The position numbers and the translations under genes are program-made. A stretch of DNA of 56,755 nucleotides, the filler included, from Platydemus manokwari (lineage: Eukaryota): NCBI GenBank assembly GCA_037951405.1. It is 5 parts of 5 records of this genome, joined end to end, with 100 filler letters (N's around TTAATTAATTAA, not from the genome) between each part and the next. Parts side by side here need not be neighbours in the genome. Positions count along the whole stretch, not along the records: positions 22,148 to 35,983 come from JBBMOY011601408.1; 4 more parts are not named here. One strand, given 5' to 3'. The notes beneath the pieces are model-generated. The model worked only from the letters and a program-made list of their open reading frames with translations. It ran no database searches and was not told the DNA's origin. Position 1 is the stretch's first letter. Each line of letters starts with the position of its first letter. Shown one piece after another: positions 22,148 through 36,300 of the stretch.

Positions 22148-22758
22148 ACACCTATTATCATTATTTCTTATGTTCAATATCTCTCTTGAAAACATGGGTA
22201 ATTTTACATAACTACTTCCTACTAGTGAATTATATTTTGTCAACTCAAGAAGTAATGATTTTACTCTAACAAATCTCCAACCAGATTTACCTTTATGTAC
22301 TTCACGTTCACTTATATAATTATTTAATTCATCTAAACTTCCATCTATAAGTATGTTAATTAAATTTCTATTTGTTATTCTTTCAGGTTTTATATAATGC
22401 TGAAAATCCCTTAAATAATCTTCTTCATAATCCTCTCCATCTTTTTTAAACTCACAGGTAATTGTTATTTGATATATAAATCTTGATTTAACAAAAATAT
22501 AAAAATTATTTATTATATCAACCAATTCAGTTCTTAGATTATATATTTATATTTTATATTTACATCTTTTACTAAATCTAATTTTATCTTATCATACTTT
22601 ACCTCATATCCATATTTCTCATAAACACCTTTAAAATCATTATTTAGTTCACCTTCTCTAGATCTTATTTTCTCCGCTTCTATTAAATGAAGGAATGATT
22701 TTTTATGAGAAATTAAGGCTGTCTTATTTTTTAAATATTTATCACAATATTTTATCAC
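22148..22758 (-). mobile_element. Polinton/Maverick-like protein-primed PolB N-terminal fragment, frameshifted, running into a gap
   Basis: Zn-finger-like CDKYL..SHKKSFLH, then GKSGWRF...GSSYVKLP...ILNIRNNDNRC, matching the GSGW..GSSYIxLP..INIxNxDxxCF signature. Confidence 0.7.
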
Positions 22759-24715
22759 AATAAAATTCTAAATTGGGTTCATTCATTTTTAATGAATATT
22801 TTTTTAATTAGAAATTATTTTTATGATTGTTTTACATTTTTTAGTTAAATTATCCCATATGAGTAGATGTAAAACAGGTATTCTTTTCCAAACCCAACCC
22901 ATAAATTCGAGCGAACGAAGTGAGTAATTGAAAAAGTAATGTGGACAAATTATTCTTTGGCAATCGATATGTATAGTAAGGAGCAAATGTAATTTGATAA
23001 GCACTCACATATTTAACAGAGGTTCATTGATAAAAAAAAACAATAACAATACACTTGAAAATATAAAAAGCAGGCATCTCAAATTCACAAATATTACCTC
23101 ATTGAGGTGAAACACAAACCAAAGTTGTACATCAATTTCCAATCACCTAAGCACGGCTTCTTAATCTATTTCTGTTAATAATATTATTCGTTTCGATTTG
23201 ATTTTTTCACTAACAAAATTCTAATTCCACTTTATTTAAAGTCAGATATGAACTAATTATTTTTAAATTTCATTAATAATAATATTAATAATATTGTCAC
23301 AATAATAGAAATTCTGTTTTTTCAATAGATAATTAAAAAAATAATTAAAAAAATCAATAAAACAGCAAAATATAATTTATTACAAATCCAAAAACACTTT
23401 TGATAAATCAAAACAAACCATCAAATACAAATTCAGATAAATCAAAATACTTTATTAAACAAAGATGGTCAGTTAGAAAAATAAACAGATCGAATACTTC
23501 TTTTGTTGTCATTTTCATTTCTTAATTTCGCGTGTATTTTTAAAAAGTTATTCGATTCTGTTACCAATGGTTGTCATAATATTCTGACAACAGTGTCAAA
23601 AATTTATTAAATGATATACTCAATTATTAAATATCTTTAATTTATTGTTTTAGTACTCAAGTCATGTGTTATAAATCTCCTTATTATCGTGATAACATTG
23701 AAACAATCTTGATAGATTATTGTCATTATTAAATCACACGGTTAATAAATGAAAATATAATTTATCACGTTTGTAATATAATAAAATATAAAAGTCAAAG
23801 TCATTATTATAAAAAAAACCGCAATCACTATTCGGATCACAAATGTCTTAAGCACCCAGAAGAAGATGAAACACCCACATGTGTGTAAGAGAGAAAGAAT
23901 CCAATAAACTATTGATGATTTTGAGCTCTCTATTTGTGTAGTTATATGTGTGTCTGTAAACCATGTGTATAAGTTCAATGATTTTATTCCTATCTATTTG
24001 TCATATTTATTGACAATTCTTTTGGTTTTTTTAATATAATATTTTATTCATCTTAGCGCAGCACTATTTTCGTTATTTTTGATTTCCATTCACTTCTCTC
24101 TTGAATGATTCATACCACATACAAAGTTTGTCAGTTGTTTTAACGTTAAATAATTTCTTTAATAATAAACATTGGTCAAATTAAAAATGCCAGAATCAGA
24201 GAAATGAACTTCCATGTTGATTCAAATGATCATGATAACGGAAATTATTAATAATTATTGAAATGCCCGGTTAGCTATGTAATGTGACACATGTATGATC
24301 GATTAAAATAGCTTTGTAATGATAAATGTATCATTTTATTTGTTTTAATATGTGAATTTGCTGTTATGCAAAAGTTTCTAATTAGTGTGCGTCTTGTTTG
24401 ATAAAAGATTATTGACAATGATTGATTGCATTGATCAGGATATTTTGCACCAATATTTATGTAAATCGAAAGTAACTTTATAAATATAAATAAATTCCAA
24501 TGTGTTCATAATTTGTATGTTGTTGCTAACGAGAACTCGGGGATTGTTTTGAAAATTATTCAACAAATGATCGACATTCAAACCGAACAATAAAATTCGC
24601 TTTTGATCAAAGGAAATCAATTCAGAAATGTCATTTGAATGTTAATGTTAAGGGAGAGTCATTAATAATGAATTGAAAGAATTAATTTAAATTGATTTTT
24701 ATTACAAATCATGAA

Positions 24716-24769
<54 letters not shown>
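24716..24769. repeat. (AAT)18 microsatellite
   Basis: Perfect trinucleotide run. Confidence 0.97.
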
Positions 24770-26059
24770 CTTTTTTAAATTAAAGGTTGAATTATTGTGG
24801 AGTCAACTCTCGCTTAATAAATCACATCAAATAAAATGAAAAAAATTATTTGTTTTTTAATATGCAACCTCATATAAACTGATTTTAAGTTTATAAAAAT
24901 CTTGTACTTCTCTACTCCTTGGGTTTTTATTTTCATTATCAATATTTATCTGATTATCGGTGCCCATTTATTCCTTTTCGAATGGTAAGTGTTGCTATAG
25001 TTCATGTTTCTTATTGTTGGATTCTAAAATAATCTTAGGTTCCAACTTGTATTTTACTAAAACCTACTAATCAATACGAATAAAAATAATTATAAATTCA
25101 ACAAGGTTTCAACATAAACATCAGCAAAAATCTTGGCTTCCTACTAGCATTTGAACGTTCGTATATCAGTATTTATTTGTCAGGTTTCAATCGGATTTAT
25201 TGATTTTGTATTCTTGAAATTGGTCAATTACTATGTGTGTGATGATGTATGGCTATGTCCCTTTTTCGAATTATAATTTTCCATTTAAATCATCTGTGAT
25301 TGTTTGGTTGCTATGCCCGTTTGGTTGTGTAGCCACACAAATGCTTAGAGTGCTAAAATAAATGTTCCCATTCCCAAAGTTGTTTTTGGTTTGCAAGATC
25401 GCATCCCTACTCCGCATCATAAATGGTGAATCAATACCTTTTTGGTTAGCCTTTTGTACTTACTTGTATGAATTGAGAGTGATACAAACCGATCTGTTAT
25501 GTTTCATTAGAAAATTGGTTTTGTTTAATTTTATGTGGTTCTTTGATCGTTTAATGTACTTTAGAATAAAGTTTCAGAATTTCCTGAGTTTCCATTGTAA
25601 AATCATTTTCGTCAATGTGAGGGTTTATTGACGTATAATAATGCAGTGCTTAACTCTAACAGATCTGTAATATCATCGATTTGAGCAAACTTATGTACCA
25701 AGAAGATTATAATATCACAAATTCGTTCGGAATCCTGTTAATCCGAAAGACATTTTGGGAAATTAATATAAAACTTTGATCGTACCATAATTTCTTTCTT
25801 GATTTCCACTTGATGGTATCGTTTCTGGTCATCTTTTACCGAAAAATATCAATATTATTTTAATTTATCGAAAATCATGTCGGACATTGTTATTACCATG
25901 TTTTATGCTATCTTTTTTATTCATAGTATATACAGATTCTTTCACTGGCATATTTTATCTGTACAAATACAAAGAGTGATCGTCATGACAATGGAATTTG
26001 ATAGATAGTTCTATTTTTCATTACTTCAACTATTTGTTTATTGGTATATGGTAATCAAA

Positions 26060-28650
26060 CAAATGCCGCTGATCTGATTAGAATGCTCACTTCGGTTCGC
26101 ACTGCTATCCCAACCAACGACACTTCCAGATTTACTCCGAAGAAAGTCATCAAACCATCAGTTCTTCATCTAATGGATGAGTCATCCTCTGACTACAAAC
26201 TGAGAACCCAATTCCAAACTGAGCCAAAGAAACCCTTCAAAATATTATGCCCTCAACCAGTCCTACAGCGACTCCTTACATCGAAGACATCATAACTCAC
26301 TACTCGAAGCCAATACCGAAACCGCTACCAAACAACTACTGCTCGCCAATACCAAAACATGAGGACAATTCGAACCTCAAAGAGATTTCGCTCGCTGAAA
26401 TCGCAAATATGTTCGCCAAACTTGCAAAATCCTCATCTGACAATGATGGGATCACGTACAAAGATTGAAGACAGCAAGACCCGCACCATCTTTACCTCCA
26501 ATCTCTATTCAACAGGATACTAAAAACAAAAATCATCCCAAACCAGTGGAAGGAATGTAATACTAACTTGATAATTAAACCAGGCAAGCAAGACCTATCT
26601 CATCTCCCAACTTCGTGAGGACCAATCGCGCTTACGGATACTTCATATTGAATATTCACCACGATCCTCAACCTCAGATGTCTCAAATGGATCGATGCCG
26701 GCAACTTACTTTCTCCAAATCGAAAAACAATGTTCTCTTCTGTCGGATGCGCTGAAAACAAGGCTTGCCTATTCTCGCTACAGGAATATGCATCACAAGA
26801 GAACAAAAACCTCCATCTGTGCTGGATCAACCTCAAAAAAGCTTTCCCAAGCCTGCCCCACCATTTCATCTGGTATACACTCAAATTGATGGGCTGCAAC
26901 TCTCACTATATCGAAATTATCCAGGCCTTATACGAAGACAGCAGAACCACATACATTTGCAGGATGATCAAGACTCCACCAATACCGATCCATCGTGGTG
27001 TCAAACAAGATTGCCCCTTGTCAATGACACTGTTCTGCCACTCAGACGACTCTATTCTACGCTCATCATCGGATATTCCAGAACAGCTAACAGTCCACAA
27101 AATCCAATTCTCCACACTGGCATACGCTGATGACATTGTCATCTTAGCAAACTCTAGAGAAAACTTAGAACACAGGCTCAACCACATTATCAACGCAACA
27201 AACGAAATTCAACTCACAATCAACGCCAACAAATATGGATACTTCACTAAAAACAGCGACTTCACCCATCACAAAAGTTCGCAGTGTTCAACATCTTCCT
27301 GCACTCTCGGCTTCCCTTCCACCTCCGGACTCAGCAAGTGGCAACAGCAAAACTTGATTCCAGGACCTTGATGACTAATAAAGACAACGAACTTGAACAA
27401 TCTTTCGGCAAGAAAATACGTCAAATTCTCACGATGGACGGGTCGAACTCTAGCAACAACTTCTTAATGTATGCCCCGGCTAAACTCAGTGAAATTGCAC
27501 TAACCACCTCACTCATGGAATACTGTATCCAAAGTGTAGTTGGAGCTTTCAGATTCTTAACCAGTCCAGACCACCAATTCAGAGCCTTCATCAGTGACCA
27601 CATCAATTATATAGTCAAACACAGGACTTAGGAATATTGTGATCTCAACACCGCCCTTCTATGGATCTCGAACAAGTTAAACACTGATAAACCCAGCTCA
27701 TCCTCAACATGGTGGACCAAAACCCGATTTGCAATTCGGAAGATGAGCACTATTAGGATTGACATCCAATTCTACCAACACAACGCGGAGATCCTTCTGA
27801 AAGTTACAATCGAAGAAGATCAAACCTACCATTTCAATTTCAATAACAGAGGCAAACTATCAAATATTCTACACGACTAAGTTTCGATGAACCATTACAA
27901 GGAGTGGTCGGCTTGACAAAAGCTTCTCAGCCTCGCATCTGTCTCAGAAGCCAATGAAAAGCCGCCACCTCTCACCTGAAGTATGGATATTTGTCCACCA
28001 AGTACCAGGACCTGCATCAAAAAGACATGCTGTAATTTTCAACCACTTCGGACATTATCTCAGCTAGTAAGGCTATGACACGGACATCGACACAAGTCCG
28101 CCGAAAGTCAACGCAAAACTCAGACCTCACCTAATTATTAGGAACAAGGCAAAACGTCATGCCTATATCGTGGATCTGAAAATTCCATTCGACATCGCCG
28201 ACAATTTTAAGAGGCACAAATTACTAAACCTCGAGAAATACAGGTCAATTGCCTCCGATATCAGGATCAGAACTTGCTATGAAACCAGCTTAGACGTACT
28301 TTGCCTCGGAGTGCTCGGGACCCAAAGAAGAATGGGACCCAAAAATCGGCTTCGACAAAGCCTGAATCACATTCATCGCTAGATTCCTGATAAACTCATT
28401 GCAAAAGACGCCTTCGCCACCTACAAGGCTCACACGGATATGCGAAACCTCAAGCATCCATCATGGAACAGGGCCTTCAAACAACTCACCGGCCTTAGCA
28501 ATGATTTCAAAGAGAATCGACAAGAACCATAAGGAACCTAACTAGGAAATCTTCTTAAGGAAATATCCGAAGACTTCGGAAATGTATATATTATAAAAAT
28601 GATGTGAGGATTGTGTCAACGCATGTTTATGTGAAATAAATTTTATTTTT
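26060..28650 (+). mobile_element. 5'-truncated, decayed non-LTR retrotransposon with RT and restriction-like endonuclease (NeSL/R2/R5-type)
   Basis: Higher GC block. RT motifs DGITY, PIAL, GCAEN, WINLKKAFPSLPH, RGVKQDCPLS and LAYADD; REL motifs RPHL.I / YIVDLKIPF / EKY; many stops and frameshifts; AATAAA near 28636. Confidence 0.9.
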
Positions 28651-30364: not shown

Positions 30365-32382
30365 TTAATTGATTTTTAAAACTTAAAATTAAATTTATTT
30401 GTTTATCTTTAATATTTAATTATCATCATAACTTCATAAGAAAACAATCTCAATCAATTAATAAACTATTTATTCCTTTTCAAGTTATTTTCTAGTAAAT
30501 TTAGATTTTTATTTGATAATTATTATTTTATTATAAATTCATTAATTCATTAGTAATTACGACTTGATTTAGAAATACCATCACTATGTCACTATAATTT
30601 CAAAATGTCATCTTTATTAGTTCTTAATATTGATTGAACTAAACATTAAATTAAAAAATAGAGATGTTTAATGACATCTTTAATTTTATAACTTTCAATA
30701 CAGCAATAATTAATAAATCAAGAATGGAAATTAAAAAAATATTTATTATTTTTATACTTTATTTAAAAATAAATGCAAATAATTTATTTCAAATAATATT
30801 TATTCATTTTTATATAATTTTCATTTTTAGTTTCACTAATTATGATTGTCATGATAATTTCAAAATAAGGAAAAAACTCATTCATAAAAACACATTTTAT
30901 CAATGCTTATACATTTTAAATTTAAGCTGCCAATCAGTCAAAATAATGGATTACAGATTTTTTGATTTTAAAATTTATATTTATAATAATAATAATAGTT
31001 TTCAAATATTGATATCATTTTATATTATATTCAACTAAATATAATAAATCAGATATCTATTTGATAAAATTTTAATTTTGATGGTATTAAATTTATTTTA
31101 TAAATCTAATCATAATATTAATAATAGCTCTACTGATCTAGTGTTTTATTAAAGTCAATACAAGTTCTCAAAATCATATCAAATTATAAAATCACGAGAC
31201 ATGACACATCACAATTTCATCATAAACGATTCAATCCAGATTTATCAACAAAACACATCCAAATCTAACTAAATGAAAATTATTTTTCAACACAACAATA
31301 TCAAATATTTATTCCTAATTTTTCCAATTATTCTCACTTGATTTGAAAATATATGCGACAACTTGAGTTTTATTGAAATATGTATTATAGATTGTATCAA
31401 ATTATTTATCAAATCATTTATCGAAACTCATTTATATTATTAATTATCAAATAAATTTCAAATAATATTTCACATATTAAAAATCTACAATATCATACCC
31501 CCCACATTCAAATAACGACCAATTAATTATACAACAAATCACATTTCTCTGATCAAGATTTCATCACAAACTGACAAAACTAGTAATCAAATTCATTCCT
31601 TTTTTATAAATGCCGGTCTATCATTTATTAAAACAAGATTAAAATTTTATGTAATTTTATTTTAATAAAATCATAAATATTTTTATCATTTCGTTTTAAA
31701 TTATTCTTCATCAATATTTTCACAGATGGTTATTCTACATTATTATAATTTTCTCGTCGTTAATTATTAATTATTATTATTTATATTTTCGGTTTAATTT
31801 CATTTGATAATGTTTTCAAATGTTTATTGTTTATCAAATACATCAAGCAAATCCAACCGATTAATTCATGTCTTCTACATCAGCATGATATGAGTTTCAA
31901 ATCTCAATGAAAATCTGAAATGAAAATCCTTTTTGCGAAAAAACATTGAAAAATCATTTGATAACATTTCTTAAACTTATTCAAGCCGCATTATTCGAAC
32001 TGTACAAGACATCAAATTCATTATTATTTACAAAATCAAATATCTTTTATTATTTAACAACGATAAACATTCATCGATGAGCTTTGTTGTTTGTTTTGTT
32101 GAGCATTTTATTCGAAACATCTAAGTAATGAGGAAATAAATTTGAACAAAATCATTGATTTATTGTTTGTGAAAATGTCAAAATAATCGACAAAGTAAAT
32201 TGAAATTATAAATGAGATTCATTAATTAATTATTAACTAATATATTTATTAATTAAATCTGGCATTCGTCTGCAATTGATATGATATTATTGATGATATA
32301 AAAGTTTTGCAATTTCTTATCGATGATTGAAAAGGAAATACAATATATCGATTTGAAAATTATTTTTCACTTTACAGGAAAA

Positions 32383-33335
32383 ATGAAACTCTTGATCAAT
32401 GTGGGATGTTTAATATTAATATTGATGATATCAAATCGATGGGTTGATGGATTTACATTGGGTAATGATTTCTTTGATTATTAACTGATAATAATTTGAA
32501 GAATATTTTATAATTAACTGCAATAATAATAATTAATATTCGAGCTATGGAATTATTGTATTTAAATGAATTAGAATTGTTATAATTTTTTAAAATACAT
32601 TTCGATTAGATTAGTAATTTAAAAATTAATCTTATCATATCTATCTTCATTGAAATATTTAAATCATTTGACAAAAGATGTCTAAAAATATTTGCATTTA
32701 TAATTCATATAAAATATGATTATCGAATTGATATCTAGCATTTGATATCAGATTTTTAAAATTATTTTTAATTCATTTTATTCATTTTCATTGCTACTAA
32801 CGATGGCATTAACGCAAGTTTTATGCGTTAAATCATAAATCTACAATTAATTTGTTTAAACCGATAGATGATATGAATATATTATATTTCCAATTCAAAC
32901 TTGATTAGTAAATACCCAATTTTAATATCTTTATTCTTACACGAGAAGTGGTTGACATTATTAAACTAGTAATTCTCAAAATGCAACAGTAATATTTATT
33001 TAATAATGTAAAATTGTTTTAATAACTACAATTAAATAAATAGTTAAATATAAATTTAAACCATAGATTTATTAATAATGGACAGTTTTCAATGCACGGT
33101 GATGGCATTGTTATCTTATAACATATATACGATATACATAGCTATGGTATAAAATGAATATATGTATTTAATTTATTTATATATTTATTTGTGATTACAA
33201 CTTACAGGAAAGGGATCATTAAATAAAAGACAACAATCTCCTCAAGTTAAGCAACCTGATCTTGTACGGGTATGGGTTCAAAAATTATATAAAAGATATG
33301 ATGTATTGGATGGTCATGCAAGGCATTCAGGATAA
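32383..33335 (+). CDS. Small secreted neuropeptide-prohormone-like gene; exons 32383-32461 and 33208-33335; 68 aa MKLLINVGCLILILMISNRWVDGFTLGKGSLNKRQQSPQVKQPDLVRVWVQKLYKRYDVLDGHARHSG*
   Basis: Signal-peptide-like exon ends at phase-1 donor G|GTAATG. The matching phase-1 acceptor CTTACAG|GA gives an exon with two KR dibasic sites and a terminal Gly before TAA. A TTTACAG acceptor lies 5 nt before the ATG. Confidence 0.72.
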
Positions 33336-36300
33336 GGTAAATGACAGGAAGCAATTAAAATGACAATGATTTCATGTGTTCTGGATTGATTGAAATAATA
33401 TTGTTTTCATTTTATTTATTAATAATAATTATTATTCGATATATTGGTAATTATATTATTATCAATATTATTTTTATAAAATATTTAATAATTATTTTTT
33501 ATAAATATTTTCAAAACAACTGAAGTGATTTCTCAGATTTTTAACAAATATTCTTTAATTTTGAATTATTTTGTTTATTAATATTTATTTAAAAATATCA
33601 CTGATAGGTCTCAATGATATTAATCAACAATAAATAATAATATTAATAATTAATAATATTATTATTTATATGTTCACAAGCGAAGTACAATTTTTCCTTA
33701 TCGCTGTCTAGCAGAATCGATTCATTGGCATCCATGTTTTACACGATATTCAACCAATATCCATTACAATACAAACACAATCTGTAAGCCAATTAAAACA
33801 AACTACTATTATAAATAATTGTCAAGTACAAAATTAATTGCAGTAAAATTGAAAAATAATAATAATTATATCTTCACTTGGTATCAATATCAATGTTCAA
33901 AGATTAGAGACAAATTGGAAAGATTTAAGATAAGTTGGAATTTTTGTGAAGGAATTTCTAAAACAATGAGTTTTAATTTATTGATCAATATCGATGTATC
34001 AACAGTACACCAAATTTAGATAGTTTAGTTCTATATCATTATTAGAATTAATAAAATAACTCATTAACATCCGATAGAATAATTCTGTTCTGGTTTCTAT
34101 GTTCCTTACTTAATGATTTGGTAATTGTGTTGCGTTATCAAACAACAGTTTAAATCTGAAAATCAGTATTAACTAGAATCATACACTGAAATCCTCAATA
34201 ATAACATCAACAAAGCTCTGCGCAATTTAGGAAGAAAATCATTCATGATGAGGCTAGTGCCCGAGAGTCAAAAATATAATGAAGAGTAATCAAAAATACT
34301 GATTACTGAAATCACACGTAAGCTAAGCACTAGGATTACCGATCAAAAAAGACTGGCGGGAATCCATTGAACTCAACCGATTTTATAGACCCATGAGATA
34401 TGTCGGATTGAGGTCACAGATCTTCGTTTTCAATTCACTGATTTAGTTTGTGGATCGATTTACTTGTCATTGTCGAATATTTGAGCTTGCTGCAATTTGG
34501 AGGTATGTGCCTGTCAATTCTCAGCTTCTAAATAGGATGAATCTAACATTAGGATGAATCTGATTGGTTTACGGTACGTGTGTTTATCGGTTTATTTTTA
34601 TTGACCCTTTTTAGGATTTTCCCTGGTACTTGTTATCATTTTGGTTGATTTGTGATACACTTAACAATTGCAATACACTGATCTGATCTTATTGAGTTTG
34701 TATTCTTTATCTGTTTGTCTTCGTCCAGCCTTTTGATTACCGTTTTTATCTGTATTTATTTATTCTGATCTGATTTGTCATTTTTATTTTCAATTTAAGG
34801 TTTTTTTTCAACCATATTCAGATACAATGAAAAACGAAAAAATTAACAAAATATGATGCTTTTGAATAATCTCAGTTTTCAGTTTAAAAAATTGCTATAA
34901 ATAGTTTTGAGACAATAAAAGAATATCATAATTAAGACAATATCATTGCTTGCAAAACAATCAAAAAAGATTTATTAAATCAGGATATCACTGAACTTTC
35001 TACATCTCTATTAAAATTAATTATTCGAAATCAGATAAAACAACAGTGAGTAATAGAAAAGGTAAAAAGAGATTTAAAAGCTATTAAAAATAAACAAGAA
35101 AATATAAATATAAATATAATTCAAAGAAACTTAATCAAGAAAATAAACTAAAAATTGTGTATATTAATTCTGATTTATTTATAGCAAATGGAGAAATATC
35201 ATCTGCACGCTCAATCACTTCATATTTAGAAATAAAGTTACCAGATTTCAACGCACATGAATTTTTAATAGTTGAACCAGATTGTACTACTTTTTAAAAT
35301 TAATGGAACTAATATTCCACTTTGCTTTTTCTCATTCTCTGTGATATCAAGCTGCTTTCAAACAGTTTTGTGACAACAATTTCTTTGGTACAAAGTTATT
35401 CCGACGTCTACCCTCGTAATCTAGTATATCGCTAGAAATTGGACAATATTAGACGTCATTATTCTACGATATATGAAATAAAACTATATTCATGAGGGTT
35501 TTCGTTGTCTTGATAGTATTGAAATATCCGTTACAGCTTATAATAAACAGTTCGATGTCATTCACTAGTAGACAAAGTTCAGAATATCACACATATGAGT
35601 GGTCAAAATATTACCAGTATCTTTATCCGCATTGAAATTGTAAAAATCTGTTATAAAAATCAAGTAGAAAATGTTTTTTATTATTTTATAATTAATCCGC
35701 TCGAAATTTTTCAAATACCAATCATTATAACAATGATGAAGCTCATTTAAGATTAAACACAGAATCAAAAACTATTTACAAGCACAGAATTAATCTTTTC
35801 CACTAGTTTAATAATCCTCATTTTCTTTGCGATAATAAAGCCTATTGTATGGATTTTCCTTTATTCACAATTTTTCCTATTATATATAGATCATTCTGTT
35901 TCGATTTTTTTTTACACATTACGTAAAAATGTTAAGTAATTTGTTTTAATGAATTGTTTTTTATTGACTGTAATTAACCATTTNNNNNNNNNNNNNNNNN
36001 NNNNNNNNNNNNNNNNNNNNNNNNNNNTTAATTAATTAANNNNNNNNNNNNNNNNNNNNNNNNNNNNNNNNNNNNNNNNNNNNGGCAATTAAATTGGTTA
36101 GTTTAAACAACAGCAAAATAAAAATAGAGTGACTTCGTACATTTTAAAGATTACTTTTAATTTTATATAAAATTAATTCAATGCATAATATTATTGTCGA
36201 TAACATTGCTAAAGTATCTAATTATGTTTTCAAAATGTTTCATGAAATGTCTAATTTTAACACAAATTATGAGGCTTATTGTGTCTAAGCATGTTAAAAA

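What the first reader, a model, noticed from the sequence alone, without database searches (positions are those of the whole stretch)
32383..33335. Hidden two-exon neuropeptide-prohormone-like gene missed by ORF calling
Seen: a signal-peptide exon and a phase-matched second exon give a 68-aa precursor, SP(..VDG)/FTLGKGSLN-KR-QQSPQVKQPDLVRVWVQKLY-KR-YDVLDGHARHS-G-stop. Established: KR sites are prohormone-convertase sites, terminal Gly signals amidation, and N-terminal Gln can cyclise to pyroGlu. Inference: three dissimilar peptides including YDVLDGHARHS-amide, which I cannot assign to a known family. It sits in about 4 kb of extremely AT-rich DNA with few recognisable transposon remnants, which could be regulatory.
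Basis: partly seen in the sequence, partly recalled or inferred. Interest (0 to 1): 0.75.

Follow-up and report, generated by a model that had tools for sequence, protein, structure and literature searches.

The report
Likely small secreted-peptide precursor gene
A tiny two-exon gene that would make a 68-residue secreted, hormone-like peptide precursor really is readable here, and its second exon has a strong protein-coding signature, but no transcript or relative could be found, so it remains a good prediction and not a proven gene.

Summary
Exon 1 (32383-32461) has an ATG, a hydrophobic signal-like N-terminus and a GT donor. A 746-nt phase-1 intron ends in AG. Exon 2 (33208-33335) has two KR sites and a Gly before the stop, giving 68 aa.

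New support:
- Exon 2 has the strongest codon-position GC asymmetry in the 13.8-kb piece (GC1/2/3 = 0.56/0.34/0.15). P is about 1.5e-4 in shuffles, and 0 of 8105 chance open frames reach it. The signal starts and stops at the predicted exon ends.
- A phase-matched signal-like ATG exon within 1 kb upstream arises in only 2-3% of shuffles.
- The full strict pattern arises 0.002-0.007 times per shuffled piece.

Missing or against:
- No run on record as RNA holds the locus.
- No homologue turned up in the word search, Pfam, 1.84 billion representatives (only spurious TPR/WD40 repeat hits), the Atlas, PDB, or the published planarian prohormone tables.
- In the best DNA run, variant contigs carry only amino-acid-changing differences in exon 2. 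One removes a KR site, and that contig also skips 61 nt, which breaks the frame. It may be an allele or a decayed paralogue.
- The organism could not be identified.

Verdict: probably a real, lineage-restricted prohormone-like gene (about 0.5). It would be an ordinary kind of gene.

The parts
32365..32378 (+). Acceptor-like site (TTTTCACTTTACAG) ending 4 nt before the ATG. It could be a 5'-UTR intron acceptor or a trans-splice acceptor. If used, it would remove the in-frame upstream ATG at 32323.
   Evidence: Sequence. It closely resembles the intron acceptor at 33194-33207. Function is inferred, not shown.
32383..32461 (+). Exon 1 coding part: ATG, Lys at residue 2, a 14-residue hydrophobic core, then a polar SNRWVDG stretch with Val at -3 and Gly at -1 before FTL. 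It ends in phase 1.
   Evidence: Translation. Kyte-Doolittle 10-residue means reach 3.3. It is the only phase-1 signal-like ATG exon within 4 kb upstream of exon 2; shuffles give one in 2-3% of cases within 1 kb and 6-7% within 4 kb.
32462..33207 (+). Intron of 746 nt, GT...AG, phase 1, GC 0.20. The donor context is TGG|GTAATG and the acceptor is TTATTTGTGATTACAACTTACAG|G.
   Evidence: Splicing itself was not observed.
33208..33335 (+). Exon 2 coding part including the TAA stop. It encodes the rest of a 9-residue peptide, KR, a 20-residue Gln-started peptide, KR, and an 11-residue peptide followed by Gly and the stop.
   Evidence: Translation. GC by codon position is 0.56/0.34/0.15, with P about 1.5e-4 against shuffles kept open in frame, and 0 of 8105 chance ORFs in 3 Mb reach it. 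It is the top 40-codon window of the whole piece on either strand, with the signal confined to about 33195-33341. Its FYINK content (0.17) is the lowest among the piece's open frames apart from a few inside the retrotransposon remnant.
33225..33230 (+). First Lys-Arg site (AAA AGA).
   Evidence: One variant contig in run X1 has A>T at 33226 (Lys to Ile), which removes this site.
33291..33296 (+). Second Lys-Arg site (AAA AGA).
   Evidence: It lies inside the 33261-33321 stretch skipped by one X1 contig.
33330..33335 (+). C-terminal Gly codon followed by TAA. The Gly is a potential amide donor.
33354..33359 (+). ATTAAA, a possible polyadenylation hexamer 19 nt after the stop.
   Evidence: Such hexamers occur 7.4 times per kb in this DNA, so it carries no weight.

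Best explanation
This is a real, lineage-restricted, two-exon gene for a 68-residue secreted pre-propeptide of the neuropeptide or peptide-hormone type. Exon 1 supplies a cleavable signal peptide, with likely cleavage after VDG. A phase-1 intron sits three residues later, as is common in secreted proteins. Exon 2 supplies a Cys-free propeptide. Inferred processing: a subtilisin-like convertase cuts after the two KR pairs, a carboxypeptidase trims the basic residues, the C-terminal Gly is converted to an amide to give YDVLDGHARHS-amide, and the Gln-started middle peptide may cyclise. What is shown: the sequence layout, the coding signature of exon 2, and the rarity of the combination by chance. 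What is inferred: transcription, splicing, secretion, cleavage, amidation, and any neuronal role.
For: The layout is exact. Exon 2 GC1-GC3 is 0.415. That gives P = 1.5e-4 in frame-open shuffles, 0 of 8105 chance ORFs in 3 Mb of Markov-2 sequence (maximum 0.326), and the top window of the whole piece on both strands with edges matching the exon. A phase-matched signal-like ATG exon upstream occurs in 2-3% (1 kb) to 6-7% (4 kb) of shuffles. The strict full pattern occurs 0.002-0.007 times per shuffled piece, and only 2 of about 300 loosely matching chance models reach an asymmetry of 0.4. The exon-2 frame opens only 13 nt before the acceptor. The amino-acid make-up (no Ile or Phe, one Asn) is unlike chance ORFs in this DNA. 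In run X1, an 809-nt contig at the full depth of 41 covers the upstream region and exon 1 with no variant inside 32058-32581.
Against: There is no transcript evidence. No run on record as RNA holds the locus, and the two listed runs look like DNA (the X2 contig 33143-33394 runs unspliced across the acceptor). No homologue was found anywhere, and no match in the published planarian peptide and prohormone tables. The X1 variant contigs carry three differences in exon 2, and all three change the amino acid: 33208 Gly to Glu, 33213 Gly to Arg, and 33226 Lys to Ile, which kills a KR site. One contig at depth 18 also skips 33261-33321 (61 nt), which would break the frame and delete the second KR and the amidated peptide. 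Exon 1 alone shows no codon-position signal (0.27/0.27/0.35). An in-frame ATG at 32323 would add 20 residues ahead of the signal peptide if it were transcribed. The organism is unidentified, so the presence of convertase and amidating enzymes is assumed. S-amide is an unusual neuropeptide ending (my own knowledge).
Confidence: 0.5

Rival explanations
1. Exon 2 is, or recently was, protein-coding, but the locus is a decaying or dispensable copy (a pseudogene in the making, or one of two paralogues), or the true gene structure differs from the reader's.
For: In X1, one contig (depth 18.2, against 12.5 for the window-type contig) carries Gly to Glu, Gly to Arg, Lys to Ile (loss of KR) and a 61-nt skip within exon 2. 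Its divergence is similar in the exon (3 of about 67 nt) and in the 3' flank (4 of about 65 nt), so it shows no sign of constraint. A second frame, 33223-33360, is also open and ends at a good donor, AAG|GTAAAT at 33338/33339. An acceptor sits 4 nt before the ATG and an in-frame ATG lies upstream.
Against: The window's own copy is intact from ATG to stop with good splice sites. GC1 of 0.56 against a background of 0.20 would erode quickly without selection. Other X1 variant contigs differ from the window at only one exon-2 position but at 3 positions in 19 nt of the 3' flank. The 'between: not known' flag means the 61-nt skip is not proven to be a clean deletion.
Confidence: 0.2
2. It is a real small secreted protein, but not a neuro-endocrine signal. 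Examples would be a cationic antimicrobial or gland-secreted peptide precursor, or, if the organism is not an animal, a Kex2-type processed secreted peptide.
For: The propeptide is Cys-free and net cationic (6 Lys and 4 Arg against 4 Asp). The stretch LVRVWVQKLYKRY could form an amphipathic helix (inference). KR processing is shared by antimicrobial, toxin and fungal secreted-peptide precursors (established knowledge). The organism is unidentified.
Against: A C-terminal Gly directly before the stop, two KR sites that delimit 9-20-residue peptides, and a Gln right after a KR are the classic neuropeptide-precursor combination. No similarity to any known antimicrobial or toxin family appeared.
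Confidence: 0.15
3. It is a chance pattern: open frames, hydrophobic stretches, AAAAGA (Lys-Arg) and GT/AG are all common in 20-25% GC DNA, and the reader picked the best-looking combination.
For: Open frames of 40 or more codons are plentiful (112 frames of at least 38 codons in the piece). Loosely defined prohormone-like models arise 0.14-0.16 times per shuffled piece, which means very many across a whole genome scan. TATA-like and poly(A)-like hexamers are frequent, at 2.9 and 7.4 per kb. There is no RNA and no homologue.
Against: The codon-position asymmetry of exon 2 is outside the whole chance distribution. Joint occurrence with the strict pattern and a phase-matched signal exon is of the order of 1e-5 to 1e-4 per piece.
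Confidence: 0.15

Closest known systems
Orphan 'secreted peptide prohormone' (spp) and 'miscellaneous amidated peptide' genes of the planarian Schmidtea mediterranea (Collins et al. 2010, PMC2953531)
   Same: They are short precursors recognised by the same logic: a signal peptide, basic cleavage sites, and Gly as amide donor. Many have no relatives outside the lineage, and they are easily missed by gene callers (Table S4; abstract).
   Different: No shared 4- to 6-residue word with any peptide or prohormone in that paper's text or tables S1-S7. The C-terminal ...HARHS-amide fits none of the listed families: RL/RMamide, RFamide, RRVVamide, Wamide, NPY, pedal peptide, planarin, FRL. Those genes were backed by mass spectrometry and in situ data, and this one has neither. 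It is not shown that this genome is a flatworm's.
Generic metazoan neuropeptide precursors processed by PC1/3 or PC2, carboxypeptidase E, the amidating enzyme PAM and glutaminyl cyclase
   Same: Signal peptide, KR-delimited peptides of 9-20 residues, Gly-stop, Gln after KR, no Cys, and a phase-1 intron next to the signal-peptide cleavage site.
   Different: There is one copy each of three unrelated peptides, not repeats of one motif. There are no acidic spacers. S-amide is an unusual ending. No family assignment is possible.
TPR-repeat protein P0001 and WD40-repeat protein P0002 (the only hits in 1.84 billion representatives)
   Same: Short local resemblance of ...QPDLVRVWVQ..Y.R.D... to a TPR repeat unit, and of VRVW....YK...VL.GH to a WD40 repeat junction.
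   Different: The E-values come from adding 4-5 repeated weak stretches in proteins of 1781 and 1244 residues. Pfam finds no TPR or WD40 in exon 2 even at E up to 1. Architecture, size and composition are unrelated. I treat these as spurious.

Membership tests
Neuropeptide / peptide-hormone precursor (functional class) | N-terminal cleavable signal peptide | tested here: inconclusive
   Lys at residue 2, a 14-residue uncharged hydrophobic core (Kyte-Doolittle up to 3.3), and Val at -3 and Gly at -1 before FTL. No trained predictor such as SignalP was available. Hydrophobic ORFs are common in AT-rich DNA.
Neuropeptide / peptide-hormone precursor (functional class) | Mono- or dibasic convertase sites flanking short peptides | tested here: met
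   Two KR pairs at 33225-33230 and 33291-33296 delimit peptides of 9, 20 and 11(+Gly) residues.
Neuropeptide / peptide-hormone precursor (functional class) | Gly as amide donor at a peptide C-terminus | tested here: met
   GGA at 33330-33332 lies directly before TAA. In most X1 variant contigs, 33213 G>A would also create FTL-Gly-Lys-Arg.
Neuropeptide / peptide-hormone precursor (functional class) | A spliced mRNA exists, expressed in neurons or endocrine cells | not testable with these tools
   No run on record as RNA holds the locus. The two listed runs are contigs that look genomic.
Neuropeptide / peptide-hormone precursor (functional class) | Processed peptides detectable, and their production dependent on the convertase | not testable with these tools
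   This needs peptidomics and a knock-down.
Neuropeptide / peptide-hormone precursor (functional class) | Cleavage sites and bioactive core conserved in relatives | tested here: inconclusive
   No relative was found. Within-sample variants include loss of one KR and a 61-nt skip in one contig, and a gain of a KR in others.
Described Schmidtea mediterranea prohormones (Collins 2010) | Sequence identity or a shared peptide motif with one of the 51 listed genes | tested here: not met
   Twelve 4- to 5-residue words from the model are absent from the main text and/or the 8 supplementary tables, including the sequence table S5. The C-terminal motif is not among the families of Table S4.
WD40 or TPR repeat proteins | Match to the family profile | tested here: not met
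   Pfam finds no family for exon 2 at E up to 1. The representative hits are sums of weak repeated stretches.

The most novel reading that the evidence does not exclude
The locus founds an undescribed, lineage-specific amidated neuropeptide family (an ...HARHS-amide peptide plus a pyroGlu-started 20-mer) that segregates as intact and disrupted forms within one population or polyploid genome. That would make it a naturally polymorphic peptide-signal gene.
Probability: 0.25. Interest if true: 0.5.

Novelty: new member of a known kind. Interest (0 to 1): 0.4.

Why it matters
Short neuropeptide precursors are routinely missed by gene callers and by homology searches. Each confirmed one adds a signalling molecule and a handle on a neuron type. 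If this one is real, it is an orphan with no detectable relatives, useful for peptidomics and receptor de-orphanisation in its species. It also shows that codon-position GC asymmetry can rescue tiny exons in very AT-rich genomes. It would not change any concept, because orphan prohormones of this architecture are well known.

Tried and rejected
- RNA evidence: the single run search returned only two runs, none on record as RNA. Laying them showed genomic-looking contigs and no GT..AG joint at 32461/33208. All listed joints have short sides in low-complexity AT-rich DNA.
- Homology with exon 2 by reference: word search found none, Pfam none, and PDB sequences nothing below E 0.1. The Atlas gave no usable hit, with recognition 1332. 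A degenerate DNA pattern for the C-terminal peptide found 0 matches in metagenome contigs.
- The 1.84-billion-protein search gave only TPR and WD40 repeat proteins, which I rejected as additive repeat artefacts.
- Literature: the peptide strings and '...amide' names are in no paper, and the one 'hsamide' hit is the word cyclophosphamide. Collins 2010 text and tables gave no match.
- Organism identification failed. The RT ORF gave no homologues in the allowed length range, only generic Atlas clusters, and no encoding contig for the RT ORF or for the 53-aa ORF over exon 1.
- Repeats: neither exon is part of a repeat within the piece.
- TATA and poly(A) hexamers were rejected as evidence because of their high background rate.
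- A resemblance of YDVLDG to the orcokinin / pedal-peptide N-terminal motif is from memory only and was not tested. The single copy and the amide ending argue against it.
It was assembled only inside my local pattern-counting scripts.

Full report
**What is there**

- The ATG at 32383 opens 26 codons plus one base, up to 32461, followed by GTAATG.
- The intron is 746 nt and ends ...ACTTACAG at 33207.
- Exon 2 (33208-33335) completes a Gly codon and adds 41 codons and TAA.
- The product would be 68 residues: a Lys-2/hydrophobic-core N-terminus with Val at -3 and Gly at -1 before FTL, then a 9-residue peptide, KR, a 20-residue peptide starting Gln-Gln, KR, an 11-residue peptide, Gly and the stop.
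- The exon-2 frame is open only from 33195, 13 nt before the acceptor.
- GC is 0.30 and 0.34 in the exons against 0.20 in the intron and flanks.
- About 4.5 kb around the locus has GC 0.15-0.26.

**Is it more than chance?**

Open frames of this length are common here: the piece has 112 frames of at least 38 codons. So I tested the whole pattern.
- A scanner for signal-like ATG exon + GT[AG] donor + YAG acceptor + matching phase + 50-150 aa + at least 2 KR + terminal Gly finds only this model in the real piece.
- It finds 0.002-0.007 models per dinucleotide-shuffled piece. Loosened to any two dibasic sites and any amidation Gly, it finds 0.14-0.16.
- I wrote the criteria after seeing the hit. 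Across a large AT-rich genome, the loose pattern would arise by chance many times. The pattern alone does not prove a gene.

**Independent evidence for coding**

The decisive new observation is codon-position composition. In the predicted frame, exon 2 has GC 0.56/0.34/0.15 at positions 1/2/3.
- The difference GC1-GC3 is 0.415. It is reached in 0.015% of shuffles of the exon that stay open in frame.
- None of 8105 chance open frames of at least 41 codons from 3 Mb of second-order Markov sequence, trained on the AT-rich part of the piece, reaches it (maximum 0.326).
- A stop-blind sliding scan of all frames and both strands puts exon 2 first in the whole 13.8 kb (0.475). The signal rises at about 33195 and falls at about 33341, which are the predicted exon limits.
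- 35 of 41 codons end in A or T. The peptide has no Ile or Phe and one Asn, unlike chance ORFs here (FYINK fraction 0.17 against a typical 0.4-0.6).
- The nearby retrotransposon ORFs have a different profile (GC3 about 0.5), so exon 2 is not part of that element.
- Given exon 2, a phase-1, ATG-started, signal-like exon with a donor appears within 1 kb upstream in 2-3% of shuffles, and within 4 kb in 6-7%. The real sequence has exactly one.
- Only 2 of about 300 loosely matching chance models reach an asymmetry of 0.4.
- Exon 1 alone shows no asymmetry (0.27/0.27/0.35). With 26 mostly hydrophobic codons, this says little.

**What could not be shown**

- Transcripts. X1 (0.93 of sampled words) is probably the source or the same species. 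X2 (0.20) is explained by a single 252-nt contig identical to 33143-33394 at depth 2. That contig crosses the acceptor unspliced, so it is DNA-like and carries no information on constraint. No joint at 32461/33208 was seen. This does not count as absence, because no RNA data were available.
- Homologues. Exon 2 found nothing in the word search, Pfam, the Atlas, PDB sequences or a degenerate pattern scan of metagenome contigs.
- The exhaustive search of 1.84 billion representatives returned only a 1781-residue TPR protein and a 1244-residue WD40 protein. Their E-values come from 4-5 repeated weak stretches. With no Pfam support, I reject them.
- Literature. The peptide strings occur in no paper and in none of the tables of the planarian prohormone study, including its sequence table. 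The C-terminal motif fits none of that study's families.
It was built only inside my local counting scripts.

**Evidence against a constrained gene**

- In X1, an 809-nt contig at the full depth of 41 covers the upstream region, exon 1 and the first 120 nt of the intron with no internal variant.
- The rest of the locus is split into variant contigs of depth 7-18.
- In exon 2, the listed differences are 33208 G>A (Gly to Glu), 33213 G>A (Gly to Arg, in three contigs, the majority form, which would create FTL-Gly-Lys-Arg) and 33226 A>T (Lys to Ile, destroying the first KR).
- The contig carrying all three (depth 18.2) also joins 33260 to 33322, skipping 61 nt. If this is a clean deletion, it shifts the frame and removes the second KR and the amidated peptide.
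- That contig diverges about as much in the exon as in the 3' flank, so it looks unconstrained.
- The other variant contigs differ at one exon-2 position but at three positions within 19 nt of the 3' flank, which points weakly the other way.
- Depths do not settle whether the disrupted form is an allele (12.5 + 18.2 + 11.8 is about 41) or a second locus. The tool flags the joint as 'between: not known'.

**Other caveats**

- An in-frame ATG at 32323 would prepend 20 charged or polar residues unless transcription starts after it, or unless the strong acceptor-like site ending at 32378, 4 nt before the ATG, is used.
- TATAAAAG at 32297 and ATTAAA at 33354 are in plausible places, but such hexamers occur 2.9 and 7.4 times per kb here.
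- A second frame, 33223-33360, is also open and ends at a good donor (AAG|GTAAAT), so alternative structures cannot be excluded.
- The organism was not identified.

**Most likely mechanism**

The best reading (about 0.5) is a real, lineage-restricted gene for a secreted, convertase-processed, C-terminally amidated peptide precursor.
- The signal peptide is removed after VDG.
- Cleavage follows at the two KR pairs, and the basic residues are trimmed.
- The Gly is converted to an amide, and the Gln-started peptide may cyclise.

All of these steps are inferred from established processing rules. Only the sequence features and the coding signature are shown. The rivals are:
- a coding but decaying or differently structured locus (0.2);
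- a secreted peptide with a non-neural role, such as a cationic antimicrobial or Kex2-type product (0.15);
- chance (0.15).

**Comparison with what is known, and verdict**

The locus works like the orphan 'spp' and miscellaneous amidated prohormones of planarians, and like neuropeptide precursors in general. It is not a member of any described sequence family that I could test. It is best filed as a probable new member of a known kind. This is a sound, testable prediction of moderate interest (0.4), and one spliced read or one orthologue would settle it.

Noticed in passing
window 26041-28400 (+), GC about 0.42: Frameshifted remnant of a retrotransposon. ORF 26730-27368 matches Pfam RVT_1 (E 5e-18). 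Neighbouring ORFs are in other frames. Its GC3 of about 0.5 is unlike the host-type exon 2.
   Followed up: partly
window 22148-22767 (-): Two adjacent open frames (133 and 77 aa) run off the left edge of the piece and have host-like codon-position GC (0.32/0.26/0.12). One has a weak C2H2-type zinc-finger match (E 0.0085, below Pfam's cut-off). From memory it resembles N-terminal regions of Polinton-type polymerase genes; this was not tested.
   Followed up: partly
window 33261-33321, seen in run X1: One contig (depth 18) skips these 61 nt inside exon 2 and carries three amino-acid-changing differences upstream of the skip. It is a disrupted allele or a paralogue of the locus.
   Followed up: partly
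window 33143-33394, seen in run X2 (organism B): A single 252-nt contig at depth 2.1 is identical to the window, in a run labelled as a different organism. Nothing else from the locus is held there. It could be a trace of organism A in that sample, or cross-contamination.
   Followed up: no
window 32365-32378 and 33194-33207: The acceptor before the ATG and the intron acceptor share nearly the same sequence (ACTT(T)ACAG|GAAA). This hints at the species' acceptor consensus, or at a (trans-)splice site just upstream of the start codon.
   Followed up: no
window 33223-33360 (+): The +1 frame over exon 2 is also open for 46 codons and ends at a strong donor-like AAG|GTAAAT (33338/33339), 3 nt after the model's stop codon.
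   Followed up: no
window 24709-24780: A (TAA)n microsatellite of about 70 nt.
   Followed up: no
window 24889-25029 (+) and 33712-33834 (+): Two further open frames show moderately raised GC1-GC3 (0.26 and 0.24, about 2.5-3 SD of the chance distribution). No family match was sought.
   Followed up: no
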